Part shown: in pieces, positions 14,719 through 62,172 of the stretch | Position numbering within the stretch: position 1 is the first letter of the stretch | Layout: each line of letters starts with the position of its first letter | Assembly (NCBI GenBank): GCA_965637545.1 | Contig: OZ281497.1 | Coordinates: 14,260,001-14,324,000 of the forward strand | Length of the DNA stretch: 64,000 bases | Source: Phallusia mammillata | Lineage: Eukaryota | Reading direction: 5' to 3' | Notes under the pieces: model-generated | Databases searched by the model: none | Told to the model about the DNA's origin: nothing | What the model saw: the letters and a program-made list of their open reading frames with translations, nothing else | Made by a program: the position numbers and the translations under genes

Positions 14719-15974
14719 ATGACTAAAGTACAAATTGTAAATGTTGAAGTTCTAGATAATCCCTCAAATTTTTACAATCCATTTCAATTTCAAATTACAT
14801 TTGATTGTCTGGAGAATCTAAGAGATGGTAAGAGACTGTGAAAACAACTATAAAAGCGTTACTTGATGCTTATGTGTGTTTTTGCAGAAAAAATGCAATA
14901 CTTTGGTGTGAACACCTTTTTTATTTCCTCTGTTGTTTTTATTAGATTTAGAATGGAAAATTGTTTATGTTGGTTCTGCTGAAAGTGAAGCATTTGATCA
15001 GATTCTAGATTCTGTTTTGGTTGGACCTGTACCTGCCGGTAGACATAAATTTGTATTTCAGGTAATGCTTGTATTACAAAATGGAATGCTTAATAAAGTG
15101 ATAAGACTGAACACAATTGTATGTTCAGGCGGAACCACCAAAGCCGGAGCGAATTCCAGTTGAGGATGTTGTTGGTGTTACCATTGTTATTTTAACTTGT
15201 ACATATCATGGTCATGAATTTGTCAGAGTGGGTTACTATGTTAACAACGAGTATTCTGATCCTGAACTACGGGAAAACCCACCAGATAAGCCAGATTTTA
15301 CAAAGGTAAAATGTAAGGACATGACCTTTAAGCCATGAACTTTTAAGCGGCAGCTTACTACTGCTCCTTGAAATATTTGAATTTAATTCTGATTTCATGT
15401 TCTAGGCTTTAATTCTAAAGTATGGATGTTCATGACAATACTACAGCAATATTGTGAGGTTACTTGTTACCCAAAGCAGTCTCATCTACCGCAATATAGT
15501 TAAAACTTATTTTTGGTGTTTTTAAACTGCAAAAAACAGTTTGTTGGTGAGGGGCAACCATATAAAGTTTTACAACCACTGTTACAAACATAGCACTATT
15601 AACCGTATAAACTAATTTTGCAGCTGGTAAGAAACATTTTGAGCAGTGAACCACGTGTTACAAGGTTCAAAATAAACTGGGATGACAGTGCCACATCTAA
15701 TGAGCAGCAGTCAGGGCCACCCATGTTTGAAGGCAACGTTCCCCCATCACCACCACCAGGAGTGCAATACAGTGAATCAATGTTAGAAGACATTCAACAA
15801 GCTATGTGTGAAGTGTCAAAGGATTCTTTAAAGTCAGGCCATGACTCCAACACTTCTAAAGCTGCCATGAGTAATGGTGAGAACTTTCAGAGTAATGGGC
15901 CTGTAAACAGACAGTTTCCTCCATGTTTGGAAAACTCTATTGATGCAATGGAGGCACAAATGCTTGTGGAATAA
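14719..15974 (+). CDS. ASF1: Histone H3-H4 chaperone ASF1 (250 aa)
   Basis: join(14719..14827,14946..15061,15129..15305,15624..15974). Translation: [79 protein letters not shown]...[13 protein letters not shown]...[15 protein letters not shown] introns with consistent phases. Confidence 0.98.
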
Positions 15975-21166: not shown

Positions 21167-23308
21167 CTACATTTCTATTCTAGAGTTATAGACCATTGCA
21201 GCCGGAGCCATTGTCGCAGTGTGTTGAGTGTACTTCTGTCTTGAACTGTTTCCATTCCCCAAAGGGGGTCGTTGTGGTGGCGGTGGGGGAGGGGGAAGGA
21301 TCAATGATTTGCTTTGTTGGTTTGATTGATTGACATTTGATTGCATATTGCTCCGCTTGACGTCTACATAATTAGCAAACCTTGTTCTGTTCTGTGTCTC
21401 AGTGTTTGTTGGAGGGTAAGAATGCCTTCCGTGCAAATTTGAAGAGTTAACATCTGCCTTGGTGTTTTTACCTGGATAATCCTGAGTTGCTTGGCAAAAT
21501 TTTTTCTTCATAGCCATACTGTCTTTTTGAAACCCAGACTCTACAGAACGCAATTTCCACAGCGCGGCAGCTGATGTAAGGGCGCTGTAACTGGCGCCAC
21601 CATCGGTCGTGTTACCAATATGCGACGACCGCAAACTTGGTCTGCCTAACAGCGATGACGATCTTCTGGGCGGGTTTCCGATTGAAGTCGAACTTCGTTG
21701 ACCAGCTAAACCCATTCGTAAAGGAATGGAAGTATCAGTTTGGACGCTCTTGCTTCGACATTTCTCTCGCGTCTTACGCTCTGTGTATTCTACGTATAAC
21801 TGCAATGAATGAAGTTCTCCCTCCACCTGAAATCGACGTCGAGTTTCTTCGTTTCTCATCTGTTGTGCCAGTTCTTTTTCCTCGCGCAGTCGTCGAATAA
21901 TTTCATTCTTTTCACGACATTGCGAAACTGCCTCGTTTTTTAATTCACCGGCAACCTAAAAGCATGCAGGAATATGTAAACTTTATGAGGGCCCTAACTT
22001 GTGACCTTATAGTGAATTTAGTAAGAGTTAATACAAAATAATAGTTTTAATTAGTTTACAGTTTTATGAACTATTTTTAAATCATTATACGAGTTTGATA
22101 GATTTGTTTACATTTTAACGAACCCGAATAAATTCTGAAAGTCCATCCAGCTTCTGTTGAAGAGATTGTTTTTCAAGCTTCAGTTGTTCCACGTTCTTGT
22201 TTAGTTCTCTAACTTCTCGACTCTAAAAAATGATTAACCGAGTATAAGTATCATTTATTTGTAGATAAAATTATGTATTCAATTCCTACATCTCAAAATA
22301 TCATCTAAAACAACAACAAATCACTTGCAATTTTTAGGTGGAAACAATACCTTTCCGTCTTTTTTCTTGTCCGTTTTGTATGAGCTTCCAAACATCGAAG
22401 TTCTTTGTAATTTGAGGTTTTCGGCGGATAGACGTTTGGTCTGCGCTCTCAGCTCCTGCATTTGCTTCTGGTTGATCGCTTCCTGTAACTTGAGACGGTC
22501 GCGAAGGGCTTCCTCTCGCTGAAACCACATAGTTTTTTTGTAAAGTTAGTTGCCTGTCAACTAAAGTACATTATTTGCGCCACAGTAAGACCGCGAACTT
22601 ATCGGCTTTTATCCAAAACTAGATCGAGCTATTGATATGTGTTGTAGGAGTTTTGGAACTCCAGGCGACAAATGCTCCCTTGAACTCACACACGTCAACT
22701 GAAAATGAAGTGTTGGCTTTTAACCGTCGAAGTCATGTGAAAAGGCGGCCGAATTATATTTCATTTGTGCTTTACCCTATTGTGAAAGACTGTGGACATA
22801 ATTGATAAACTGTTCAGAAGTTCTCGAAGTTAAACGATTGTCGAAGCAACGCTGACATTGCAAACTGCGTGTAAAGTAGTAGAAGTGGTAACGTATAATG
22901 ATGGTTTACTTGACGAGCAGAACGCGCTGTGGGTTCCTAATTATTGCATATCCCAAATAAAATTACATCTAATGCGATTTTTTATTATGATACCACGTTG
23001 TCTTTTCGTTTTGCAACGATGGAAAACAACGCATTCTCCATTAAAACCGAGTATATTTAATATCTTATGGTCACTACCAAAAGTTTGCCAAAACTACAAC
23101 AAAATCACCTCAGGAAGTAAACAACGAAATTGCTTACCTTAAGAGCTTCATCACGCTGAAGTATAACGCTGTTGCGTTCCCTACTTGTTCTACCCGAGTA
23201 ATCATCTTCCTCAAGTTCATTGGAAAAATGATCTCTCATTTGTTCTTGACTGAATCTAGGTCTGCCAATAGATCTGGACGAACGACTTTCCATCATGTTT
23301 ACCTTCAT
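21167..23308 (-). CDS. Uncharacterised coiled-coil protein (~408 aa) with a disordered, polyproline-containing C-terminus; upstream exons possible
   Basis: Exons 23308(acceptor at 23332)-23138, 22518-22351, 22222-22124 and 21955-21167, all joined by phase-0 GT-AG junctions. Heptad-like segments REEALRDRLKLQEAINQKQMQELRAQTKRLSAENLKL and SREVRELNKNVEQLKLEKQSLQQKLDGL. C-terminal LPPPPPPPQRPP. Confidence 0.8.
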
Positions 23309-36900: not shown

Positions 36901-38209
36901 ATTTCTACTGACTGGTGGTTTTGTCGTGTGATGCTTTTCGCATCTTAGAAATTTACTGTTTCTTAAGTTTCATAGTAAGAGTTTCCATTTGCGTTTTTAT
37001 GTCTCAAACAAAACTCGTTTACGAATTCTAATTGCTTTTTAACCAAACCTGGTGCCTAAACCTTGCCATGGGCGGTATCATATATGAGTCAGAACACATC
37101 AATCCGTGCAACGTAAAAGGGAGTTGACGATTTTGTTGTTCGTATCGTAACATAGCGTTGAAGCGAAGAACTTTCGTCCGTTTATTGGCATTTTATCTTG
37201 TTCAACATGTTCTTTGTCATTCGCGAGGTGCAAACATACAAATCCGAAGTTTGCATAGAGGTTATTCCACACAGTTAGCGGGCCTTGTTCCACATTTACC
37301 ATATTTGCGTTACGCTCGAAATGTTCCAGTCGCACGTTTAAGTCGTCGTTAAAACCGCATGTTCAACCAAAGATTTTAAATAAAATAGTGCAGGTATAGG
37401 CCCTCTTGTTATTTTCGCAATTTTAACATATATATCGTAACCGCACAGGTGCAAAGCATCAAAATATCTTTTTTGTCGGGTACGTTTTGTTTGAAATGCT
37501 TGCATTAGAATTATTGTTCTCAAAGATCAATACTTTTTGACGTACTGTTCCTGTGAGAGGCAGGCTGTGCAATTATTCAGGGTGCGTCTAATTCTAAACC
37601 ATTTTCAACAAACGTAATACTAACGTGGTGGTCATACACCTAAACAAGTGATTTATGATAGTTGACGACGGCACTAAGCACTTCCTAACAGATAACCAAG
37701 GCAGTATGACAGCTTTTTGCACTGAAAGATGGTATTGATTTCGTCGTTGTTCGCTGATTAGATCCTTCTCGGTGGCCTGGCAAATAATCAACAGTGTGAC
37801 GCTTGAGCCCTCTGTTCCGGAGTACAATTAGATTAGAACGACGGGCGCATTGCGGTCTGCAGCACTGTTGTAAACTGACTTGTGGTGCAGATGAGGTTAT
37901 GGCAAGTGTTTCGAGTTACATACGATCTAACTTGCAAGGAGGCAACAGGGAGAATGCTTTATTGTGTAGAATTTATTTTGTGAGGTTGGGCAGTCACCAT
38001 TGGCTAGCTTTTAATTAAAATTATGTGTTGACTTTACTCTCCTCGATGCTGATTAGTGGGATAAGTGGGAAATTTGTTGGTTTTTCACTCTCATGTAAAT
38101 TACGGTTTGTTCTTTAGAGCTTAGTAAACAATAGCTTGACTTTCGATCGACCATGTCTGTGAGATCCTATACTTAAAAGAAACAAATCCCCAGCAACAAC
38201 TGTCAAAAC

Positions 38210-38739
38210 ATGTCGGCCAGCGGGAAAAAACTCAGCATACTTCATCCACTCAGCTTTACGTCAAGCAGCCGCAGAGCGAAAGTTCAGCAGCTAAGCACGA
38301 CGAGCCAAAGCAAACCCCAGAACTTTAGCGAAGCGGAACGACACAACTTGCTTTCGTCCCCGGCCTTCAGCCGCCGATTTAACAGGTTGGACACGCTGCC
38401 TGAAAGGGACTCTAGTCACAGCTCAACGGTAAATGCAGACACAAGGTTGGATGTGGCGCACGATGCAAGCGTCTATCCCAAAATGGAAATACAAGAACCG
38501 GACGACGTGCCTACGCAGCCTAGCTGTTTTGTGCCGCACCTATCGCCAAGGACTTTACGGCGTTTGGAACAGAAGCACCAGTATGCTAAGATCCAGCAGG
38601 AAAGACAACGAAGCGGTTTGATACCACAAGGCGGTACAAGTCCTGGTCCATCACCCCCGGTCTCGCCACAAACTATGCGACGGTTCATGATAAAGCGAGG
38701 TGGAGATTCAAGTCGTCGCTTCACTGTCGCTAGAACCAG
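38210..38739 (+). CDS. PDE4: PDE4 alternative first exon, PDE4D5/PDE4B3-like
   Basis: 530 nt (phase 2), donor CAG|GTGCTG. Ends [33 protein letters not shown](S), compared with PDE4D5 SPKLSPVISPRNSPRLLRRMLLSSNIPKQRRFTVAHTC as recalled. Confidence 0.9.
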
Positions 38740-41700
38740 GTGCTGCATTTTATTTTCGAAACATGTAGATAACAATACATAACTTAGGCGCTTTGTAGAC
38801 TTTTTTGAAATTATACATGTTAAGATAATATACTGAAACCTATGGGGAGCGTACAAGACCTTTTACAGAGCTCTCGGGGGTAATGGTTTTGCCGGACGTC
38901 TTTGTGTCGCTTTTCGGTTTGAACTTTACGTCGTATGATGCGTGTAAATGGAACTGTGGTGTTCAGTGTCTCGTATTTGATGCTGGAAAAACACGGAGGT
39001 ATTGCAGCACATGTTTTAAACAGCATCTACAAACAGTTTGCAATCAAGTTATTAATTATTTTGAGACTATCGAGCAAATACACCGTTTTCCATTTTGTTT
39101 TAAATTCGCTTGGCAGCGTGCTTAGGTTAAGTGACAACTCGAAACAGGTAATCATATTGCCGCCCACATCAATCTACGCCTCCATGTGTTGTCCGTAACA
39201 ACAGGTTTTTGTCGCTGCTTTTTGCGGCTGTTGCGTGCCAAATACAACCAGGCGCCGAAACTTGATTCGAGGTTTACGGGAGAATTATCCACGCTAAAAT
39301 TGGCCATGGTAAGAACATTGTACAGCTACAAACTTCGGGCGGGTCACAGTCCTTTGCATCATGTTTTTAATTTCGTCTGCCGCAGTCGAGCAGTCTTTGC
39401 CACATCCATCGCTGCTGCAATGCATCTGCTGTAAATAAAGGTCTAGCTTCTGTGGATTGGTTTTCATTAGTATAATGCACTGTATGTTGATATACTAGCG
39501 AGCTTTTCGTAGCTGCGCTTGACAGTTGGACAGAGAGTAATAGTTTGTTTAGGCACTTGGGGGGTCAGGGTTGTGTTATGCGGTCGTGCAAATGTATCAG
39601 GCAGTTAACAATGGGTCAGTTGTCAGCAGTTTTGCAAATGCTCTAAATTAGACTCCACTTTACCCGTAGTCAGTGGGAATAACAACAAGCCACTTAAAAG
39701 TCCGCCATGTTTTCTGTTTTACTTTTTGTAAAAACAAAAATCTAAAGGACTAATATAGATGTACGGAAAATAGTAGGTAAGTCAACAGTTAGGTGAAAGC
39801 TATTTGGCAGGGACAAGCTATGACGCAACAGCATTCATGAGTCAGTTGAACTGGTATGTTAATAGTGGGCGAGTTTTGTCACAGCGAATATGTATAAGTT
39901 TACTAGCCGCTTTTCTATTCTATACATGCAGACTGCAGGAATTTGTAGTTCCAAGACAACTGCTTGTAAAGGTCTCCATGGTGTGGTGCTTACAACATGT
40001 GTCCATCGTCACTGTTTTATGTTGTTTCTACTTTCTAGCAATCGTAAATAGCTGGGTCTCCTTTGCCATATTCATTTTTTTATTGGCGCCGAAAAAAGCA
40101 GACGACTAGAATACTTTTTATTGCTATGTGACAAAATTGCAGTTTTCTTGGCAAGTATCCTCTCTGAGTGGGGTCACTTACACCGAGTCGTCACGCCTCG
40201 ACTGACATCAATACCATCATCAAACCTTCGCTTGGTGTTTAAATTCGCTCTTTGGAGCGCAGCTCTGGTCTTGTTCAGCGACGCTATAAATATTTCATGG
40301 CTCGGTGTAAAAGCCAGCTGTACACGAATGTTCATTTGCAACAGATATTAGATCTGGTCGCTTTGTCCAAATCTTTATCTTTGTCAGTGCGCGTTACCGA
40401 ATTGTCCAGTTGACGATCTATTTTGGGCCTCGTGCCGCGGGTAGATGATTGAGTACTTGACCACAATAAAAGCTGGAATTCCCTCCCTTACCACCAACAG
40501 TTTTATTACCATCAGTTCGTGACAACATGTCAGTGCTGAGTCTCTCTGGGGCAGTCACTCTTTCTTGGTACTGCTACCAGCAGTAAATATTTCTGTTTTT
40601 TTTTTGTTTACGTGGTATGACAGACCCCTTATGTTTTGGTTCCGACTGACTAAACCAGTTGAAATTTCGTTAAGTAAATGAATCAGGTATCAGGTATCGC
40701 CGGCGGACCTAAATAGGGCTGTGGCAGAGTTCCTCAGCATTGTTCGCTCCTAACAATATCAAACCCACTCAGCCCTTAAAATGTCCAAATGGCCTCCTTT
40801 GTCGTGGCATGGATCGGATTACAGCACGCGATTATTTCACTGCATCAGTATGAATTCTGTGAGTAGATTTTCCATGTTAATGATGCAAACAAGGTATAGA
40901 ACTTGTAAAGATGATTATGCACTGTGAAGCCAGCATTATCAGTAAGAATTATTTTCGAGCTGAAAAGCAACGAGAATGACCGTGCTTTGCAGAGAAAATG
41001 CGAGTCCTTATCTAAGATTGTCAGGCGAATTAAACTCTATTGGTGTCGCCGCTGAAGTGAGGGAACATGCCCCGAGCGCAGTTATGCCGCTTTTTGAAAT
41101 GAAATTGTATAGCTTCGGCCAGTGCGCATACCCAAAGTTATGTTTGTGTGCAAACCCGTAACGAAAGTTTGAAGGACATCAATGCCTGGCATTTGTATCC
41201 AGTTCGTGCCTTGCTGGCTGCGGGTAGTAATGTTAACAAACAACACTATGTTGTTGTTATAATGTCTACGTGTCAGGCTGAGTGTTCTCGCTGTGTTCGT
41301 AAACGAACGTTAAATATAAAAATCATCGAATGTATGCAGGCAAAATCGGGTTGTTAAGTACTATTGCGCGACCACCGTCATAGCAGCTGTAATTGGATTT
41401 TGTGGACTCGTAGCATCACCGAAAGCCTCTAGTAGCAAAGCTAAGGGTCAGAGCATAGAAATGAAGTCACAGTTCAGAGGAAGGTGGAGATCAAGATAAG
41501 ACGGAAACAATTGATTGCTACTAGACTAAAACATGGGTTATCCAACGTTGTGTAAAAGACTTGGTCGCGTTACTTTTACGTCAATGTAAGATAGTCAGAA
41601 TTTCTGAGTAGTTCAAATCAGCGGTTATGTAACGTGCTGTTGTATGTCAGAAAAAGGACGCCTATTTCAAGGGCAGTGATTTTAAAACCGGTATGTATTG

Positions 41701-44700
41701 TGCTACTATTTCGCAACTAAAATATGGACGTTTCCACAATATGTAGGAGCTCGGACAGGAACAAGTTTAATGCAAGGGCTTGTGTCTATATGTAAAGATT
41801 CAATTGTTGTAGTCTAATCATGATTTGTAGCAAGATGACAGGCAGAGTCCAATACATATGAGCGCCTTTTTTCCAGTTCACTGACGCTGGTAACTGCAGC
41901 AGGATATGCTCAACATGGCAACGTCCGGGAGTGACGTTTTCTACCAAAACATGAGTTGCAGCCAGCTTTGAAACAGTAAAATAAAAGCATTGAAATGGAT
42001 GCAAAACGCCCAACTGCGTGCTGTCTTTTTCTTAATGAATAATAAAACGCTTGAACAAAATGAATAATGCAGCTTCATGTACCTGCGTTATGGGTGTCCA
42101 CGTGAGCCCCACCAAGCTGCTATACATAGCTATGTAGGTGTACCAAATATTTCGTGTGACTAGTTTGTCTCATTAGGTACCACGTTACTTCCATTAATCC
42201 AAAGTAATACGTGTTTTATACGTTTTGCTATCAACACGTTTTTGTACATAATCAACTTGCAGAAGCGAATACGTTGTTTGTAGTGATTTCTCATGTTGAA
42301 ATGCTAATCTTTGTCAAAATTGGAATCTTTGCCAATGTTCGAATTACATGTGAAATTAACATTTTTACGTGCAATGGGGACCCAAGCGTTTGTGCAAGCC
42401 AAAATAATTATGCTGAAAAGACATAGTATCCAACGTAATATAATCTTGCAAATATGCGCAATGTCTTTTAAAAATAGACCTAGTGTGTGTACAGTGGCAA
42501 TATGGTTTATTTATATCTCGCCTACAGTTGGTTTAACATGTGGGGTGTAATGTGCTGATAAGCGGAATTTTGTTACAACGCCTTTGCAAGATGCGAGTTG
42601 CTGCACAGTGATAAATTTTCGATTCAAAGCCTCAGTCCGCACGAACGTAGGGTTTAAAACAAAAGGCTTTTTTAAATTAGATTTTACATGTTTACATACG
42701 CCCTTATGTACCACGGTGGCGTGGTCAATTTTGCTTCGCCGCAAGTGCGTCATAAAATGACATTAAACACATGTTACTATCATATCTCCTATTCGAACAT
42801 AGCGCTAAATGTTTCGCCTGTCAGCTTCGTTTTTGCAGTGGGGACAGACACAAATTCAAAGGCGCTTGCAAGGGTAATCGATGCGATTGGTCGCAATTTG
42901 TGCACTGGCCTATTTAGCTTGCTGCCGTCGCAAGTAATGGAACGACTAATTGCCCTTTTGGTCCGTTTTCGTTCAGGGTCGCAAGTGGTTAAAGAGGCCG
43001 TGTTTAGAGAGGACAGGTTATCTGAAGCGCAGAGTGGTATGGAGATAATGACGCTTGTTATCACAGTTTAACCTCGCGGTTTAGTGCTGAGGGTTAGCTT
43101 GATCAAAGAGTGTGTGGAATAGAGCATTATTTTCCAGCGGCATGCGGAAACATGGCGACCCAATCACTGACAGATCAAGCGCGCTATTAAAAGCCAATCT
43201 CCGTGGCATTGCGCACGCAGTCTTGGCGCTTAACGGGTTGTAATCTTTTCTGTTGCGAAAATGTTTAACAATCATAAACTGTCGTGAATTCATGTGGCTG
43301 AGATATAAGTAGTCAGATAGAGCAGGTGGAACCTTTATTGCGGAACAATGATTTGTGACGAAACTGGCAGATTCATTTGTAGCAGACACCATATTGACCC
43401 TATGCTGTTGGGCTTTAATTAAGGTTACCCGATTGATGTTACTGACGTGTTATGACTAATTTGGAGCCAGCTAAAAGTCGCAAATTTGCCAACACTCTAT
43501 ATGCTGCTGTTGTTGTCTAGCTGATGTTTGTTGTATTGAAATGTTATAGGAATTTTTTAACTGAAAGTGGTTTGGATATTCAGATTTTTTGCTCTCTGAT
43601 AGTGAGCCTAACAATATATTATCTAGATAAGGAATTTTACGGTACAAAACTGGTTGCAAAGTGAATGAAACCATGCTTTAGTCCACTGGAGTTTGGTAAA
43701 TGGATGTGACAACCAAATTCAAGACCAGCATGCCAAATATTTGTACAAATCAGACAAACTGTTGCAAGATACCAACCAGTTTACCGGTAATTCCAACTAT
43801 TCGGCTTAACGACATTGATGAGCCTTTAGAACAGCACGGAAGTAGCGCAACCAAGATATGCTCTGTGCCGCAGCAGCGCAACGCTACAAAGTCTCTGCCG
43901 ACGACCCCTTCGCCTCTGGGTTGCTCGCCCGAGTTGTCAACTGTCCATCGATTTCGCCGTAATATCGCTGAACCATATCAGCCAAATGGTGAGACCAAAC
44001 GCTTTGGTTGTGGTTCGGTAGGGGACAGTGATTTTTATCCTAGTCAAAGTAGCGGAGACGACAGTGACGATGATAGAATCAACGAAGAACTTACGTATTT
44101 AAACTCAAGACATCTTGGTAATTGTGCTGATCCTCGCAGTAACCATTTATCCAAGTCTTCCCATGTACGCCTTTCGGTCACACGTCCACCTCACTTCCGA
44201 CGACACTCTTGGATATGGTATGTAATGTTTGTGCTTGGTGTAAATTTCCACTAGGAAACCATACAACAAGTCATGTTTGATGGCATTATCATTTGCCAAA
44301 ACGTTTGATTAATAAAGCATGTCATTTTTTAAGTTTATTTGGGCCGCTAGTTTTCTCATTAAAGTCATGTTTGTGTGCTAAACGTGAATTAGGATGTAAA
44401 ATATATCATAGTAAGAAAGTATTGTGCGTGTCCGTCAGAGGGCGTAACGAACCAGTGCAGTTGTAGGGGAAAGTGGGTTTCGTGCGTTTAGTTGATTTTT
44501 TTCGCAATTTGAGTTTCCAGCGTTACTCCCAGCACTCATGTTCACATCTTCTTACTATCTAGGATTTAATTTTACTCCACCACACCAGTTTCGGCAACCC
44601 CATGTGTTTTGAGGTAAGTGAAACAGACTCGCCGGCGCCAACCGCAGACGATGAAACAGTAAAATGTTATGACACAGATCTGTTCGAGCCCAAGGTTACG

Positions 44701-47700
44701 CCTTCCTGTACGTCACTACGTGACGTTACCGTGGGTCACGCATGAATCACCGCCAAGTTGTCAATTTCCCCTTGCTTCGAATTTCGACTTTGGTGGTTCC
44801 GTTTATGATTCACGATTTGTTGATTGGAATCGGATATGCTGCGAAACCTTAACAAAAGATTTTGCTATATTGTGTTGATTTATTATTTGAAAATACATTG
44901 CGGGGGATATAAACCTATGGGAACATTATATCAAATTGCCCATATGTTTTTCCTGTACAGCAGATTATGTTTTTCCCGATGTTTTTGTCACAACGAGTTC
45001 ATTTGGGTTTGTGAACTGAATTAAGCGGGACCAGTAGAGATCGCTCTTTAAGCGCTGCTTCCCTTTTTGGCTGCAAATCAAATTTATATTGGTCTTCTGT
45101 AAAAACCTTGTTACTATTGAACAAGTGCACCAGCACGTCAGTGCACTGTTGATATTGCTGTAGAGAATTACGACCGCACGTAATATAGCGAGTGAAGCGA
45201 ACCGACAAACATCAACATATGTTGTGTATGGACAAATGTTGCTGTATTTGAACTACTTGCAGAACCTCAAAGCGAATGTTTGGTTTTGTCGTAGTTTTCA
45301 TAATTTTTGTCAATTTATGAAACGAATCAGGTAAACAAAAGTGTGCGATTGACCTTGAGGTTGGTTTTAACTTTAGACATTTGTGTTCGCCCGGATTTAA
45401 TGAGGCCAAAATAACGCGTTCTGAGTTGTGGTTTTCCATCTTGACTAAATTAGACAAAGGTGGCTTGTCGTAGCCCAGTGGTTTGACGTCGCTTCCATGT
45501 GAAAACATATTGAGCGGGAGAAAATGATCGCAACCCAAATACGAAAACAAGTTTCGAGGAATGAATTGTGACTGAGCGGCGTACACGAGTTAGTCGTCTT
45601 AATGTGGATGTTTGCCATTGAGCTGAATAAACAGCATTTATCAAAGGGCACCCATCGTCAATATATTTAGACTCGGTGCGGTACTTACACTTAGCTAAAG
45701 CTATTTCTAATTATTCCTAACCGGTTAAGGCATAGTTGAGCAAATACCACGCAGATAAAAGGTTTTGGGGGACAGTTCTAGTAACGTACAACCATAATGA
45801 ACATATTCAAAGATAAGAGCAATGAACGATGTTTTGGCACAAGAGAAAAAATTCAACCCATGACGTGCAAGTTAGGCACTAATGATTGACAGGCAGGAAC
45901 TCTGTTTAAAGTCAACAGTGATTAAATCTTGCATTGGGGGTTTTATGCAGCGCGAGGTGAGAACACTGTCCTAGTGATTTTTTGGACGACAATCGTACTT
46001 TGTAACTTGTCAACGTGCGGATGGTACTGCTGTAGTCTGGTACTTTGTGTGACAGCAGTAGGAAATTGTTGACTCTTTGGCAGGTCGCCTAGACCGCCGA
46101 CGAGTTACAGGAAAGCGAACAACGAATTACACAAGGCGTGCAAGTTTTTTCGCACACCAAAGAACATAGAAAATCAAGCAGCGATGTCATAGTGTCGAAA
46201 TTTAAATATCCTACGTGACTGCATCACTCGAATGTAGATTAATCCGAACTTCGACAACAATCGAAACGCAATTGCTTTGAATCGGTTAACCATCGGTTTC
46301 TTGGTTTTCAGCATTAACTGTAATTCCCTGGACGTTTCCTAGAAACAAGTATGACGTGTTAACCCTACTGATATGCATTGAGGCGTAGCGCAGGGATATG
46401 GTTTGTTGACTAGCTGGGTTAAACGTCAACCTGTTTTCAATGATTAAAACTTTGGTGTATGACAGAAGTATCATGTTTTGCATGAAAGATTTAGATTCAG
46501 ACACAATACATGAAATGATCGCATATAAGTAAGTCAGCTTGTGTGTATATCAGTTCTTGTATCAGTTGTAATCTTTAGATAACTTGTCAAAACAAACAAT
46601 GGTTCACTGCCCAGAGTTGTATTGTACGACAAATACCATGGATAGCCCCAGAAGTTGCAAGGTGTTAAGCCTGCGCTTACAGCCTGTTATTGAAGCAGGA
46701 AGAGAAAAAGGTTTATCAAAGTGCATCGTAGATGCTTAATAGGGGGCATCGGCATTGTCTTTCCGCATGATTTACCGAAAGTTTTTCGTTTAAAAACAAA
46801 GTGCGGCCATCCGTTGAGCTACGGTCGTTTGTAAGCGCGGTCCATTTGGAACCAGTTTTATTGCAGCCAAACGCGGTGAAAAGATGTGCGAGTTGTTGCA
46901 ACTGCCTCATCTATCAGATAGTCAGCATTGTAGGTGACGGATTGTCATTAACGTAAAAATGTTTTCATGCTAGGATTCGAGAATGTAACAGACAAGAATA
47001 CAAAGTAAGTTTATAGTAAGGTAAATAAAATACCTTTACGAAATTCAGTTTTGCCCCAAATCCTTGGTTTGGTACATTTAAAACACCTGCAATACCTACA
47101 TGATATTTTTTTGGTTTTCCGCATAGAATGCATCAAGATTTTTTTCGGGTCATAAAATACTTGTAAGCGTTGGATGTTAATGCTGAACTTGTTTGCATTT
47201 TAAGGCAAGTAACCTTTGGTCGAACCTTTAAGACATTATGTGAAATGTCAGACGAGCCAGGTAATACCAAATTCTTGAAAAGTTTCAGAACTGCTTTGTA
47301 AATGTTTGAATACGCTATCTCCGTTCGCAGAGTATAGATTGGCGTCATATCATAACGCGGGCGCAAAAATTACTGTGAGCAAATTCCGCTTATCGACAAA
47401 ATATTTCGCAACAGGTCGATTGTGGGGTCAGGTGGTGAATGTGGTAACCGGCTTCGTCGATTTGTTTGGTAAATGCCGAATGACGTCAATGGCGAGCAGC
47501 GAGGCGCACTTGAATAGTAGGGTGTGAGATCACGGGGCGGTATGACAACAAAACCTGCTCTCGTATACACTGCTCTGTTTAATCATCAACAAGGGTGCTC
47601 GCGCTCTTTTGTGAGGTAAAAAACGATAAGCTAGATCGCGGCTTTTCCCTTGCTCCTACGCAAACAAATTTACACAATCGTGAAATAGTATTTAAAGAGC

Positions 47701-56700: not shown

Positions 56701-59700
56701 ATATGCAGAAGGGGTCTGTCGGATGGTCACGACAGTCGTGTGTTGAGGCCACTACGTGTGAGACTGAGTAATCCAGAGTACCAGCGCAGTTCATCAGGAG
56801 ATACAATGGGAAGGCGGTCGATCACTTTGCACCCGCGAAACTCGTACTGTCGCGCGTCGTTGCCCAACATCGATCCTTTATTGGTTTCACGGTTAAGTTC
56901 ATAGCAACTGTTGTTCCACTGTCTTGATGCTTTTTACGGGTCTGTAATTGTTTGAAATGCAATGTGCTGCGGGTATATTTTCACTTCTTTGCGCTGCTAC
57001 CGCAAATAGCAGTTTTGCCCTAGAACGTGGCGCGGAACTTGTCCTCGTGGTGATGTTTCCAGTTCTTTGTTTGCTTAATAATATGATTATAGGTTCCATA
57101 GAGAGTATACAGGTGGATCTGTTGTATCACACATATATTTCAAAAGCTCACCGCGTCATAAATTTCTGGTTTTATTCTTGGTTTGTAAATAGATCCAAGA
57201 TCCTAGAAACATGTGTGTCTTTTGTGTGTGACATTTAAGGGTTATGAAATAGACTGTCTATAGAATTAAAATTTGATTTTTATTTGCAGTTTCGATGTGG
57301 AAAACGGGATATCTCCCATGCGAAGCCCGGTTGATCCGCAATCGTCGCCAGGAATGGTTTTGCATTCCGGTAACATGCCACATAGCCAGCGGCGCGAATC
57401 GTTTTTGTATCGGTCTGACAATGACTTCGATCAATCGTCCCCCAAGATCGGATCTCGAAACTCGTCCCTTGTCAGCGACACGTAAGTGTTTGTAATTTAT
57501 GTAATATTGCAGCTTTCAACTTCTTGACTTGTTGTACTTTTAGATTTAGAAGGGATTGTTGTAACTTTTTGCTTCAAAAAGCAGTTTCAACCCGTTATCT
57601 AAATGTTATTTGTATTCCAGGCATGGTGTGGAGGACCTTATCGTTACACCATTTGCACAGGTGTGTATTACCAGATTTGCATGCTTTGCTAGTAGCCAAC
57701 GGCAAATAATCTAAATGCCGGAGCAAAAAGTCATGCTGAGGTTCCTTTATCGAGAACACCTAACCGAAGCGACCTTTTCGAAACGATTTTTTGCCAATTT
57801 ACGTGGATTCAATTTTTACAAGTTTTATTTTATAGTGTAACGTAGCAACAAATGGCTCTAAAAAACATAACCAAAACTTAACTAATGACGAAAAAGTAAT
57901 TCATTTTTGCAAAAAAATCTGATGATACATCACACCTTACACGTAATTAAAACAACGAGAGTAATTGTTTTGTATTGCAAAGATATAAATGCAATCACAT
58001 AATGTGTTCAATGTCACGATCACGTAGATCTGTATCCAGTTTTGTCAGACGCACTTAAAACAAAGCCCATCTACTGCGCCAACATAACTCTTGATTTAAC
58101 ATAACTCTGCCTTAATCCACTGTAAGGGCAGCACTTGTTAGGCCCGTGTTTCAGCCACGTTGCACCCTTCGACATATCCGGCAGCTGGTTTTGCGATCTG
58201 ACCACTGTTTTATTCACCTACAACTGTCACAAACGGTAAAATATCGGTTTTCTGGGAAGTGCTTAACGTCATAAACATATTCAACGGAAAGTATGTATTT
58301 GTGTTTTGACTGGAGTTTCCCCAGTTAAAAGCAAAATAATGATTTCAGTCGAAAGAAGTAATTACTCTAAAATCCCTCCTAAGTAGTTCAGCGAACCGAA
58401 TCCGTGGCTAAAAGTAGCATAGCTAAACAAATCCTAAATTTTGGCAATATGCAGTGCTCGACCTACAGGTCAACTTGTCTGAATGGGCTACTGATTGGTG
58501 AAGTATATACATGACGTACACCCCCGATAACAGTGTATACTTGTTGGACGGTATATGGTACTTGACCGTTTAAGGGTTTTTAACCTGCTGGTCAAATTTT
58601 CCGCTTTATTTTGTTGCTGTAGATTTAAAGTCTTCCTTGCAATCCGTATTTTTCATGTCTTACAAGGCAACAATTGGATTGATTGGGGGAATGGGGTTCC
58701 CTAGCGCAGCCAAACTAACCTCAGCTTTTTATCTGCACTACATGGTTAAGTGCACTTTCTGACTTGATCTATCGATTTCGAAAGCTTTGCAAATTGCAAT
58801 TGTTTAGCTTTAGGTATTTGAAATGAAAGCCATTTTAAAACAAATACCAATAACTTTCGTTATCCGTAACAGCGTTTTCACAGTCCATCTGTATATTGTT
58901 ACCGATTGCCGAATACCAGCAAATCAAAAGCATTAACCGCACGTGAACGTTTTATTCGTACCGCAGTAAAATTTGCATTGTCACGATCCACAAAATGCAA
59001 GCAGTATTTGCGGCTAAAAGACTTTAGTTTAAAACACTCCTTTAAAGTGCAAACGTTCGTTTCTCAATTGGCAATGTCGGTTAGCCCTAAGCACCAAAGT
59101 CTAATTTTAACCCAGCATTTCTCCGCTAGCTCCCAGGCGTATGTATGATTCATAACTTAAACAACAAAACCAACAAGCTTTTCATAGCCTTTGCGTCATT
59201 CGATTGCATATCGCCCGTTTTTCCACTTGGTGTAGAGTTTTTTACGGGTTCTCACGTGACCGACAGTTTGGAACAGCGAAGTTCTCGGTCATAAATCCGT
59301 TTGTGACCGCACGCTTGTCGGTTTGTGAAATTCGCTTGATCAGTGACGTGTATTCCTATTGTATTACGTATAGTTCGTGGGGATAGGCTTTTATAATAAA
59401 TGACCGTGCGACTTTGCGCATCATTTAGCTTTGTAAAGCTTGAAATCTTTGTGTTTTCTAATTTCCGCATATTAAACCCAACACTCTAATGCACAAACTG
59501 ACATTTTGTATCATAGTTTTTCGGGGCTTGAGTACAAATGTTTGCGTAACACATGTGATGCAGCTCCTTATTACATACAGGCACATTGACTACAAGTATG
59601 GCAGAAATTACTTTGCACATTCAAATTAGCGCAACTCAAACTTATTAGCAGTTATTTCGAGGCGTCGCTTGACATATTACAAGATGAGATCAGTCACATT

Positions 59701-61654
59701 AATCATCGCTCCTGGCACAGACTCAGTATGTCAGCAATAGCACCAATCTTTATGATGACTGACGCCTAAACAGTACACTTGTATATGATTATTTCAAAAC
59801 GCCTTGGTTAGATGCACGTTTTATCAGCTGGCGTTACTTTATTGTAAAAATTGAATTAGTGGGTCAGGATAATGGGGGTTAGGGAGGTTTTGTGTAAAAA
59901 AATAACTGTCTATCTTGTCTATCTGGCCCTGCATTCAGTTTGAGGAACCTCATACAATAGGTAGTAGTACCATGTCGTTGACATTTCTCCCTTTTTCTGC
60001 TATTTCATTTGTGGTATCGCGACATGACGTATTTTTTGTGTGGCTAGCTTAGCATTATGACGCATGGACTGTACCAACTTCAGTCACACGTTATGCGTGG
60101 AACCTGTTTAACTAAATCTCGTTTACGGTATGTTGCACAGGTGCTTGCCAGTCTGCGACGTGTCAGAAACGACTTCATGATACTAACCAACCTTCCTCAA
60201 AACAGGTTAGGTTTGATCATGCTACTGTATCCTATGATCTAAGATATTATTCTGTCGGATAGGAAAACCGCATTTTTCAATTGAATTGAGCTATTGTTCA
60301 AAAACATGATCGAAAATATGAGTGTTACCGCCATAAAATTTTAGTCACCCATGAATGAACATGACCTACCTAAAATTCCATGACATAATCATTTAAATGT
60401 GAAATCCCTGATTAAACGGATATCATGTTTTTTGTCGGGCAATCTAATACTTTTTCCGTAGTTAATTTTGTAGTCTATAGTTGGCAGAACTTGACCATCC
60501 GTGACCCTCATTGACCCTGTTTAATCACATTCGTGACCTTGTTTAACCTTGTGCTCATGATCTATTATTGTTCAATCTCCAGTCGGCGGTCACCGGTGGG
60601 GCAGAGCAAACTCCCTCCGAGTCCGACCTTTAACTCGGCACCGCACTCAGGCACTGTCACTCCCGGCACAGAGGAGTTCATGCAACGCGCCAGCAATACA
60701 CTGGAAGAACTGGACTGGTGTCTGGATCAACTTGACACGGTGCAGACGCATCGTTCCGTCAGCGAAATGGCCTCGAATAAGGTGAGAATTTTTCCTTTTG
60801 TTACGCCTGTAGGCAGTATTTTCTGGATTATCCATGGAACGCAATAGACACATTGTTTGGCCTTAAAAATTTTCATTTTATGGCGCCTTTCTAGTAATAA
60901 TGTTGGCTTTGTGCCCATCAGTGAGTTCAATACATTTCGAAATAAAAATACTTTTTGCAGGTTCCTACGAGTTGGTTATATTAATTATTTGCTGTTTAAG
61001 CGCAGCTAATATCAATTATTGGCTGGTTTGATTGATTTGCAATATTAAAGAATACAACCCGGTAAATTACCAGGCTTGTATATATCTCGCGAACGTAAGA
61101 AATACCCGTAGGGTATTTTTTCATCACATAGATTTGCGTATTTACAATAGGGTGTTGTATGTCTTGATGCCATTATGTTTACCAATCTATATGCAAAGCA
61201 CATCGAAATCAGCATTCAAAATTACAACACTCCCTTCATCCGCACGATTTACGCGGTCATGTTTGGGTTTTTTAGGAAACGGTTTTCATGCTACATGAAA
61301 TTACACTTGCTTACATCCGAAAGCGTTCGTGACAGAATATAAGCAGATATGTTTTCCTGATTACTTGTGGTCTGCCAAATCATGCATAATGAGACATTTC
61401 AATTCGTGTCCCAACAAAACTGATGGTAAACGCCTGGTGAAAAAATCCCGAATTTAGCAACATATAAATATAATAAACATTCACTAAATCCATAATTGTT
61501 TGTATTTAGTGTATTTTAACGAATTATCTTTTGTTTATCCATTATATTGCTGACTTGCAGTTTAAAAGAATGTTGAACAAAGAGTTAAACCAGCTTTCGG
61601 GGACAAGTAAATCCGGCAACGAGGTGTCAGAATATATTTCCTCCACATTTTTAG
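38210..61654 (+). CDS. PDE4: cAMP-specific phosphodiesterase PDE4, 5' part (alternative first exons plus UCR1/UCR2); catalytic domain beyond the window
   Basis: Common exons 57290-57481 ([16 protein letters not shown]...[22 protein letters not shown]), 57621-57660 ([13 protein letters not shown]), 60141-60205 ([12 protein letters not shown]), 60583-60781 (...[28 protein letters not shown]) and 61561-61654 ([31 protein letters not shown]). GT-AG junctions with consistent phases. Confidence 0.97.
43700..44217 (+). CDS. PDE4: PDE4 alternative first exon, PDE4D3/PDE4B4-like
   Basis: 518 nt (phase 2), donor ATG|GTATGT. Splicing to 57290 gives [17 protein letters not shown], matching PDE4D3 FPFRRHSWIC-FDVDNG as recalled. 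Confidence 0.93.
47481..47488. promoter_or_regulatory. Full CRE palindrome TGACGTCA upstream of the PDE4 first exon at 47998
   Basis: Exact match ~510 bp upstream of the ATG. Confidence 0.5.
47998..48350 (+). CDS. PDE4: PDE4 alternative first exon (lineage-specific, Ser/Pro/Arg-rich)
   Basis: ATG-initiated ORF ending at the strong donor ACG|GTAAGC. 353 nt = phase 2, in frame with the common exon at 57290. Confidence 0.75.
48665..48702. promoter_or_regulatory. CRE cluster (TGACGTCA plus CACGTCA and TGATGTCA variants) upstream of the PDE4 first exon at 49325
   Basis: Exact TGACGTCA at 48665-48672 with two near-matches within 40 bp. Confidence 0.5.
49325..50385 (+). CDS. PDE4: PDE4 alternative first exon (353 aa, Ser/Arg-rich, lineage-specific)
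   Basis: Longest ORF in the window, ending exactly at the consensus donor TTG|GTAAGT. 1061 nt = phase 2, giving ...DKGLC-FDVENG. Confidence 0.82.
50615..51204 (-). mobile_element. Second, diverged Helentron/HINE-like element with ~157-bp tandem cores
   Basis: The reverse complement has the same layout as 4400-4938: units TTTTGGGGGCCTGTGGGTGAACC...TTTCTTGACCAAA (period 157-158), an A-tract, then ACAAAAACAATATGTGTCCCCTTCAGGAAAGGGGACCCATAAT. Confidence 0.75.
53106..53197 (+). CDS. PDE4: PDE4 short alternative first exon ([30 protein letters not shown])
   Basis: Not in the ORF track. ATG at 53106, consensus donor CAA|GTAAGT, 92 nt = phase 2. Confidence 0.7.
55615..55695. repeat. 9-bp microsatellite (GCAACCCAA)x8 plus one variant unit
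   Basis: Read directly from the sequence. It explains the spurious (WVA)n ORF. Confidence 0.97.
56659..56891 (+). CDS. PDE4: PDE4 proximal alternative first exon ([12 protein letters not shown]...)
   Basis: ATG in good context (ACGATGG). 233 nt = phase 2, with a weaker donor ACG|GTTAAG, 400 bp upstream of the common exon. Confidence 0.62.
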
Positions 61655-62172
61655 GTAAGTTGCATCGGTTGACAAATCGTTGGTTCAAGACTTCGCCAGT
61701 ATTTTTGCCACACAAGCAATAATACATAAAATATATATTTTTCGGTTACATTAACCTGCGCTATGGAGTAAATGAGTGGTATATGTTAGTTCAGTAGAAA
61801 TATATAAGGTTTTCATCCACGATGGGGCGCAAGAGATCAACAATAGAAAACATTTATCAAAACCAACCGATTTGGTATCAAATGAACACAGGGTCATGTT
61901 TGTTTTCTGAAATTGTGTTTTTTATGGGACAAACTGATATTTTGCGTACCTGTTATTGCGAACGGGACGGATACCGAAACATGAAATGCATCTGAAACTA
62001 TCGATAGTTTCAGTGATGACCAGCCACACCAGACGGACGGATGCATGGTTTCCCACACTAGTATGACGCACTTATCTGCTCTCTTGCGCGAGGAGACTGT
62101 CACCGCACTTCACACTTGCACGCTCACTCCTTGTCGTTCACGTCTTTACGTAGACACACACTACTTACAGCG

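What the first reader, a model, noticed from the sequence alone, without database searches (positions are those of the whole stretch)
38210..57481. Vertebrate-style PDE4 promoter array: at least six phase-2 first exons, with D5-like and D3-like exons in vertebrate order
Seen: six ATG-initiated exons (38210, 43700, 47998, 49325, 53106, 56659) each end in a GT donor in phase 2, which is what the common exon at 57290 needs. Two reproduce vertebrate isoform signatures, RRFTVAxT and RRHSWIC. Established (recalled): in human PDE4D the D5 exon lies upstream of the D3 exon; RRHS is the D3 PKA site; RRES is the UCR1 PKA site. Inference: isoform-specific N-termini predate the vertebrate genome duplications, and four further exons are lineage-specific. 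The D5-like exon lacks the NPW motif used for RACK1 binding, suggesting that this was added later.
Basis: partly seen in the sequence, partly recalled or inferred. Interest (0 to 1): 0.72.

Follow-up and report, generated by a model that had tools for sequence, protein, structure and literature searches.

The report
Sea-squirt PDE4 alternative first exons
A sea-squirt cAMP phosphodiesterase (PDE4) gene makes several proteins by joining different first exons to one shared exon, and two of those first exons match the mammalian PDE4D5 and PDE4D3 starts, so these isoform-specific ends are older than vertebrates.

Summary
The window holds the 5' half of a sea-squirt PDE4 gene. The shared UCR1 exon (57290-57481) needs two bases from the exon before it, and all six proposed first exons supply them.

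- **E1 and E2:** RNA-derived contigs from three studies end exactly at 38739 and 44217 and continue with the first bases of the 57290 exon. These two splices are shown.
- **E6:** it is 72% identical in protein in another ascidian, with the same unusual donor and conserved non-coding blocks upstream.
- **E4:** a 354-codon ORF that stops inside a strong donor, far beyond chance.
- **E3:** borderline.
- **E5:** no better than chance.

E1 is conserved in at least 12 other tunicate-like genomes. A profile of it finds a catfish PDE4 first exon (E 3e-4 database-wide; 20/38 identical pairwise). E2 ends FRRHSWIC, the same eight residues that end the published PDE4D3 N-terminus.

The main inference therefore holds for two exon types: they predate the vertebrate genome duplications. 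This goes against the published view of stepwise, largely mammalian gain. "Four lineage-specific exons" is unproven. This is a new member of a known kind, of moderate interest.

The parts
38210..38739 (+). E1, an alternative first coding exon of D5/B3 type. It has 176 codons plus 2 bases and the donor CAG|GTGCTG.
   Evidence: RNA contigs of runs X1, X3, X5 and X9 end at 38739 and run on into the 57290 exon. There are 14 orthologous exons and a catfish match.
43700..44217 (+). E2, an alternative first coding exon of D3 type ending FRRHSWI + TG. The conserved start may be the Met at 43730. The donor is ATG|GTATGT.
   Evidence: RNA contigs cover 43583-44217 and then the 57290 exon. The orthologue P0012/L001 is 53% identical with the same end and donor.
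42993..43213 (.). Conserved non-coding block about 0.5-0.7 kb upstream of E2, a candidate promoter or enhancer.
   Evidence: 68% identity over 240 nt with L001, while the surrounding sequence does not align. It coincides with a local GC peak.
47998..48350 (+). E3, a candidate first exon of 117 codons plus 2 bases with donor ACG|GTAAGC. Probable but unproven.
   Evidence: The open frame is 121 codons in phase 2 and the stop lies inside the donor. GC is 0.49 against 0.35-0.41 in the flanks. A full CRE lies at 47481. There is no RNA or conservation evidence.
49325..50385 (+). E4, a candidate first exon of 353 codons plus 2 bases with donor TTG|GTAAGT. Likely real.
   Evidence: The ORF is 354 codons and its stop lies inside the donor. 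No acceptor AG lies in the 9 open bases before the ATG. A full CRE lies at 48665. It was not tested by RNA or conservation.
53106..53197 (+). E5, a candidate first exon of 30 codons plus 2 bases with donor CAA|GTAAGT. Doubtful.
   Evidence: The only support is a strong donor and a 37-codon open frame, and phase 0 is open for 50 codons at the same donor. There is no GC rise.
54570..56114 (.). Four colinear conserved non-coding blocks upstream of E6: 54570-54645, 55379-55427, 55762-55824 and 56036-56114.
   Evidence: They are 74-94% identical to L012 in the same order. That is higher than the exon itself at 71%.
56659..56891 (+). E6, the proximal alternative first exon of 77 codons plus 2 bases with donor ACG|GTTAAG.
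   Evidence: The orthologue P0021/L012 is 72% identical in protein. Its donor CACG|GTTAGA is in the same phase, and the alignment stops at the exon edges.
57290..57481 (+). Shared UCR1 exon (FDVENG ... [11 protein letters not shown] ...) with a phase-2 acceptor.
   Evidence: Read directly from the sequence. It matches the PDE4B long-form chain 4wzi at E 5e-7. It is the target of both RNA-confirmed junctions.
57621..57660 (+). Next UCR1 exon ([13 protein letters not shown]).
   Evidence: Read from the sequence with AG and GT borders.
60141..61656 (+). Further exons of UCR1 end, LR1 and UCR2 at about 60141-60206, 60584-60781 and 61561-61656. The borders are approximate.
   Evidence: Pfam PF18100 PDE4_UCR scores 54 bits on each of two ORFs, against a cut-off of 26.9.

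Best explanation
This is the 5' part of a tunicate PDE4 (dunce-type, cAMP-specific phosphodiesterase) gene. Its long-form proteins get different N-termini from mutually exclusive first coding exons. Each exon ends after two bases of a codon and is spliced to the shared UCR1 exon at 57290.

At least four such exons are used or conserved: E1, E2, E6 and very probably E4. E3 is probable and E5 is doubtful.

E1 is the orthologue of the vertebrate exon that ends RRFTVAHTC (PDE4D5, and a teleost PDE4 exon). E2 is the orthologue of the PDE4D3 start, keeping the RRHS kinase site next to UCR1.

**Shown:** the two splices, the conservation and the sequence matches.

**Inferred:** each exon has its own promoter. 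The N-termini direct targeting and regulation as in mammals. RRHS is phosphorylated by PKA.
For: - **Splicing.** Contigs from three studies end at 38739 and 44217 and continue with TTTCGATGTGGAAAAC..., the start of the 57290 exon.
- **Own 5' ends.** E2 contigs begin at 43583-43649 with no spliced-on upstream letters.
- **E1 conservation.** Blocks are conserved in 14 other exons, all ending in phase 2.
- **Link to vertebrates.** The profile hit to Pangasianodon gigas MCI4375580.1 has E 3e-4. BLASTP gives 20/38 identical, E 6e-10, and hhalign gives 96.7%.
- **E2 motif.** FRRHSW occurs only at E2 and its orthologue among 517,584 six-frame residues. The chance of FRRHSWI at a given place is 7e-10.
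- **Published peptides.** PDE4D3 and PDE4D5 N-terminal peptides are printed in PMC12225536.
- **E6.** The orthologue and upstream conserved blocks.
- **Gene identity.** PDE4 membership of the shared and downstream exons.
Against: - E3, E4 and E5 have no RNA or cross-species evidence here.
- Contigs cannot define transcription starts, so separate promoters are not shown.
- The E2-to-D3 match is only 8-9 residues long.
- No RRHSW exon was found within 10 kb downstream of E1 orthologues in five other tunicate contigs.
- The catfish exon could not be tied to a PDE4 gene by context within 10 kb.
- The catalytic domain lies outside the window.
Confidence: 0.8

Rival explanations
1. There is one promoter, or spliced-leader trans-splicing, rather than an array of promoters. 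A long primary transcript would be processed so that one of several internal ATG exons is kept.
For: Ascidians trans-splice many mRNAs (established knowledge). E1 is preceded by acceptor-like tttgttctttag at 38107-38117, and three E1 contigs stop about 103 letters upstream of 38220. Contigs cannot show starts.
Against: E2 contigs start at four different places with no foreign 5' letters. Conserved non-coding blocks lie upstream of E2 and E6. Full CRE sites lie upstream of E3 and E4.
Confidence: 0.15
2. The array is smaller than claimed. Only E1, E2 and E6 (perhaps E4) are exons, and E3 and E5 are chance ORFs in an intron.
For: ORFs of 120-166 codons occur elsewhere in the non-coding part of the window. 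The E5 open frame is ordinary for a strong donor. Other phase-2 mini-ORFs exist at 46440 and 54362.
Against: For E3 and E4 the stop lies inside a strong donor in the required phase. Both have the S/T/P/R/K-rich make-up of E1 and E2 (0.47-0.50) and a GC rise. The E4 length has a chance of about 1e-10.
Confidence: 0.35
3. The likeness to vertebrate N-termini is convergence. Short kinase-site motifs next to UCR1 would have arisen twice.
For: The E2-to-D3 match is short. RRxS/T motifs are common in these basic, serine-rich tails.
Against: The E1 match is 38 ungapped residues with equal spacing between the RR and RRFTVA blocks. Eight consecutive identical residues sit at the same distance from the same splice junction in the same phase, and the exon order is the same.
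Confidence: 0.06

Closest known systems
Mammalian PDE4D long-form first exons (D7, D4, D5, D3, D8, D9) spliced to the UCR1 exon
   Same: Mutually exclusive ATG-bearing first exons all join an exon that starts FDVxNG. The D5-type tail (RRFTVAxT) and the D3-type tail (FRRHSWIC) are both present, with the D5-type upstream of the D3-type. The UCR1 site QRRESF is present.
   Different: The array spans 19 kb rather than hundreds of kb. The D3-type exon codes 172 residues, not 15. The D5-type exon lacks NPW and the start of the RACK1-binding region. No clear counterparts of D4, D8 or D9 were shown.
Teleost PDE4 first exon annotated as hypothetical protein MCI4375580.1 (Pangasianodon gigas)
   Same: The last 38 residues are 53% identical to E1, including KGG and RRFTVA. 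It ends TG|GT in phase 2.
   Different: The upstream part (EPCIRTFKEH...) does not align convincingly with the tunicate [14 protein letters not shown] block.
Ciona PDE4 as treated in Johnson et al. 2010 (PMC2929239)
   Same: A single tunicate long-form PDE4.
   Different: That paper used it only as an outgroup. It concluded that N-termini were added step by step within vertebrates, with the D3, D4, D7 and D8 N-termini conserved mainly in mammals. It did not report tunicate N-terminal homologues.
Drosophila dunce multi-promoter gene (recalled, not tested here)
   Same: A PDE4 gene with many alternative 5' exons.
   Different: No sequence comparison was made here. Homology of individual N-termini to vertebrate ones is not known to me.

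Membership tests
PDE4 long form | UCR1 with the PKA site QRRESF | tested here: met
   [13 protein letters not shown] lies in 57290-57481. It matches the PDE4B chain 4wzi at E 5e-7. The motif is given in PMC4346272.
PDE4 long form | UCR2 | tested here: met
   Pfam PF18100 scores 54 bits on two exon ORFs, against a cut-off of 26.9.
PDE4 long form | PDEase_I catalytic domain | not testable with these tools
   It lies beyond the end of the window.
PDE4D5/B3-type N-terminal exon | Tail SP-rich block, RR, ten residues, RRFTVAxT, then a phase-2 splice to FDVxNG | tested here: met
   The spacing also agrees, by eye, with the D5 peptide in PMC12225536.
PDE4D5/B3-type N-terminal exon | RACK1-interaction region with NPW | tested here: not met
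   E1 has no Trp. No NPW occurs in any of the 16 aligned exons. RACK1 binding is reported only for PDE4D5 (PMC2973232).
PDE4D3-type N-terminus | FRRHSWIC directly before FDVxNG | tested here: met
   The peptide is given in PMC12225536 and PMC2173774.
PDE4D3-type N-terminus | Short 15-residue unique region | tested here: not met
   The tunicate exon codes 172 residues, or 162 from the conserved Met.
PDE4D3-type N-terminus | PKA phosphorylation of the RRHS serine and AKAP binding | not testable with these tools
   The function in mammals is described in PMC7770493.
Alternative-promoter array | A separate transcription start for each first exon | tested here: inconclusive
   Contig 5' ends for E2, conserved upstream blocks and CRE sites point that way, but there are no start-site data.

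The most novel reading that the evidence does not exclude
Most vertebrate long-form N-terminal classes, not just two, were already in the chordate ancestor. E6 would be the D7/B1-type exon (RRxLS, LxPLxxR and SLPxIxPL blocks) and E5 the D8-type. The internal promoters would already have been cAMP-inducible through CRE sites, giving an ancestral feedback loop with isoform-specific targeting.
Probability: 0.15. Interest if true: 0.65.

Novelty: new member of a known kind. Interest (0 to 1): 0.5.

Why it matters
PDE4 N-termini act as address labels that place cAMP breakdown at particular sites in the cell. The one evolutionary study in the searched library (PMC2929239) held that these labels were added gradually inside vertebrates, mostly in mammals. 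Finding the D5/B3-type and D3-type labels in a sea squirt, expressed and in the same order, dates them before the vertebrate genome duplications. The D3 motif, with its kinase site, would then have a function older than its known mammalian partners. A compact 19-kb locus in an animal with, as far as is known (not checked here), one PDE4 gene gives a tractable system for testing what each label does.

Tried and rejected
- **Codon usage.** A log-likelihood test trained on the neighbouring gene had no power. Even the RNA-confirmed E1 scored below the null.
- **Pfam on the six exon peptides.** Nothing found, as expected for disordered tails.
- **Flanks of E1 orthologues.** 10-kb flanks in five other tunicate contigs held no E2-E6 or UCR1 counterparts.
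- **Catfish exon context.** 10-kb flanks held no UCR1 exon. The 200 N in that locus were left alone.
- **E5 against the 54362 mini-ORF.** The DNA alignment showed only weak likeness.
- **Rfam.** No RNA family in the window.
- **TGACG half-sites.** Too common to mean anything.
- **Papers.** The RAID1 papers (PMC126212, PMC1525009) are not held, so the NPW residues rest on recall plus the printed D5 peptide. Supplements of PMC2929239 hold no N-terminal sequences.

Exons were searched one by one by reference. Only the junction codon was read in a local script.
- The 88-residue D5 peptide was not typed into tools and was compared by eye.

Full report
**What is in the sequence**

The exon at 57290-57481 reads FDVENG...[13 protein letters not shown]...SRNSS and ends at GTAAGT. 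Its first base completes a codon, so any exon upstream must end after two bases of a codon.

- It matches the PDE4B long-form chain 4wzi at E 5e-7.
- ORFs at 60.5 and 61.5 kb score 54 bits on Pfam PDE4_UCR against a cut-off of 26.9.

So the window holds the 5' half of a tunicate PDE4 gene. The catalytic part lies beyond the window.

**The six candidates**

All six ATG-started ORFs are at the stated places, and each has a phase-2 GT at or just before its stop. The junctions read:

| Exon | Junction |
|---|---|
| E1 | RRFTVARTS\|FDVENG |
| E2 | HFRRHSWIC\|FDVENG |
| E3 | ...EVRLR\|F |
| E4 | ...DKGLC\|F |
| E5 | ...IFSFN\|F |
| E6 | ...LLVSR\|F |

The criterion alone is weak. ORFs of 25 or more codons that end at donor-like sites are spread 33/26/23 over the three phases. 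Among the 21 strong donors between 38 and 57.3 kb, however, only three have long open frames upstream. These are 172, 121 and 356 codons, all in phase 2, and they are E2, E3 and E4. The E5 frame (37 codons) is ordinary.

**RNA evidence**

Six runs guessed to be RNA hold 11-18% of the words of 38210-44217, about the share that E1 plus E2 make up. I laid the contigs of four runs from three studies on 38220-44219.

- In every run a contig covers E1 and stops exactly at 38739.
- In three runs a contig covers E2 and stops exactly at 44217.
- The loose letters behind both ends are TTTCGATGTGGAAAAC..., the first bases of the 57290 exon.
- Nothing covers the intron apart from one 200-nt low-depth piece.
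- E2 contigs begin at 43583-43649 without foreign 5' letters.

The spliced form itself shows that the material is cDNA.

**Conservation**

- **E1.** It has 11 word-search relatives at 38-48% identity and three more from the profile search. The invariant blocks are LSPxTLRRLExKHQxAK, SPPxSPQT and RRFTVART. Every orthologue checked ends AG|GT, AA|GT or similar in phase 2.
- **E2.** It has one relative, on a Logan contig of DRR090687. This is 53% identical and ends [10 protein letters not shown] + TG|GTATGT.
- **E6.** It has one relative in the same sample, 72% identical. The donor CACG|GTTAGA matches ACG|GTTAAG here, in the same phase.

The DNA alignments stop at the exon edges. Four colinear non-coding blocks upstream of E6 are 74-94% identical, more than the exon itself. 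A block 0.5-0.7 kb upstream of E2 is also conserved.

**Link to vertebrates**

The E1 profile, run against 1.84 billion representatives, gave 11 hits. One, at E 3e-4, is a 99-residue 'hypothetical protein' of the catfish Pangasianodon gigas.

- Its genomic exon ends RRRFTVAHT + TG|GTAA.
- BLASTP of E1 against it gives 20/38 identities without gaps, E 6e-10. hhalign gives 96.7%.
- PMC12225536 prints the N-terminal peptides of PDE4D3, D5, D8 and D9. By eye, the D5 tail shares with E1 the SP-x-x-SP-x-x-SP run, an RR pair, exactly ten residues, then RRFTVAxT. The catfish exon matches D5 at 21 of 33 positions.
- The D3 peptide ends FPFRRHSWIC before F, and E2 ends [10 protein letters not shown] before F.
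- FRRHSW occurs nowhere else in 517,584 six-frame residues scanned. The chance of FRRHSWI at a given place is about 7e-10.

The Fig. 6 legend of PMC2929239 lists the PDE4D exons as D7, D4, D5, D3, D8, D9. This agrees with E1 lying upstream of E2.

**Reading**

Two isoform-specific N-terminal exon types were present before the vertebrate genome duplications. PMC2929239 used Ciona only as an outgroup and concluded that N-termini were incorporated progressively, with D3, D4, D7 and D8 conserved mainly in mammals. No paper in the searched library reports tunicate homologues.

NPW is absent from all 16 E1-type exons, the catfish one included. RACK1 is reported to bind only PDE4D5 (PMC2973232). A later gain in the D lineage is therefore the simpler reading, though loss cannot be excluded.

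**What stays open**

- Separate promoters are inferred, not shown.
- Whether E3-E6 are lineage-specific is unknown. E6 has blocks that recall the D7/B1 type and E5 a tail that recalls D8, but the D7/B1 sequence is only recalled and the matches are weak.
- Full CRE sites (TGACGTCA) number five against 0.83 expected. Two lie about 0.5-0.7 kb upstream of the E3 and E4 start codons. This fits cAMP-inducible internal promoters but is only a lead.

Noticed in passing
window 20456, 47481, 48665, 62173, 62841: There are five full palindromic CRE sites (TGACGTCA) against 0.83 expected, and no shuffle of 100 reaches five. Four lie inside the PDE4 gene. Two are upstream of E3 and E4, and two are in the intron after the UCR2 exon, where vertebrate super-short-form promoters lie.
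   Followed up: partly
window 54362-54459 and 46440-46528: Two more ATG mini-ORFs end in phase 2 at strong donors (cag|GTAAGC and taa|GTAAGT). The first ends PKTKRAAFS, loosely like the E5 tail [10 protein letters not shown].
   Followed up: partly
L006 47-514 and L007 1089-1565 (Logan SRR25569784, SRR25569774): E1-type exons end RRFTLAKM plus a phase-2 donor in two unidentified organisms. They are more divergent than the other tunicate copies.
   Followed up: partly
L013 10001-10200 (Pangasianodon gigas CM040455.1): The annotated 'hypothetical protein' MCI4375580.1 is a PDE4 first exon read through its donor into the intron. This looks like a mis-annotation.
   Followed up: partly
window 55614-55694 and 50707-51192: A 9-nt tandem repeat (AGCAACCCA, 9 copies) lies between the conserved blocks upstream of E6. 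A 158-nt repeat (3.1 copies) lies downstream of E4.
   Followed up: no
window 15618-15974 (+) and 21167-21859 (-): One ORF has a weak match to the end of the ASF1 histone-chaperone domain (E 3.5e-4, below the cut-off). A 230-codon Ser/Pro-rich ORF lies on the minus strand. There may be other genes between the lectin-kringle gene and PDE4.
   Followed up: partly
window 38884-39083: One 200-nt low-depth contig of run X9 lies in the intron after E1. It is probably unspliced RNA or DNA carry-over.
   Followed up: no
window 38107-38119: An acceptor-like tract (tttgttctttag) lies about 90 nt upstream of the E1 start codon, near where three E1 contigs end. It could be a trans-splice or 5'-UTR acceptor.
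   Followed up: no
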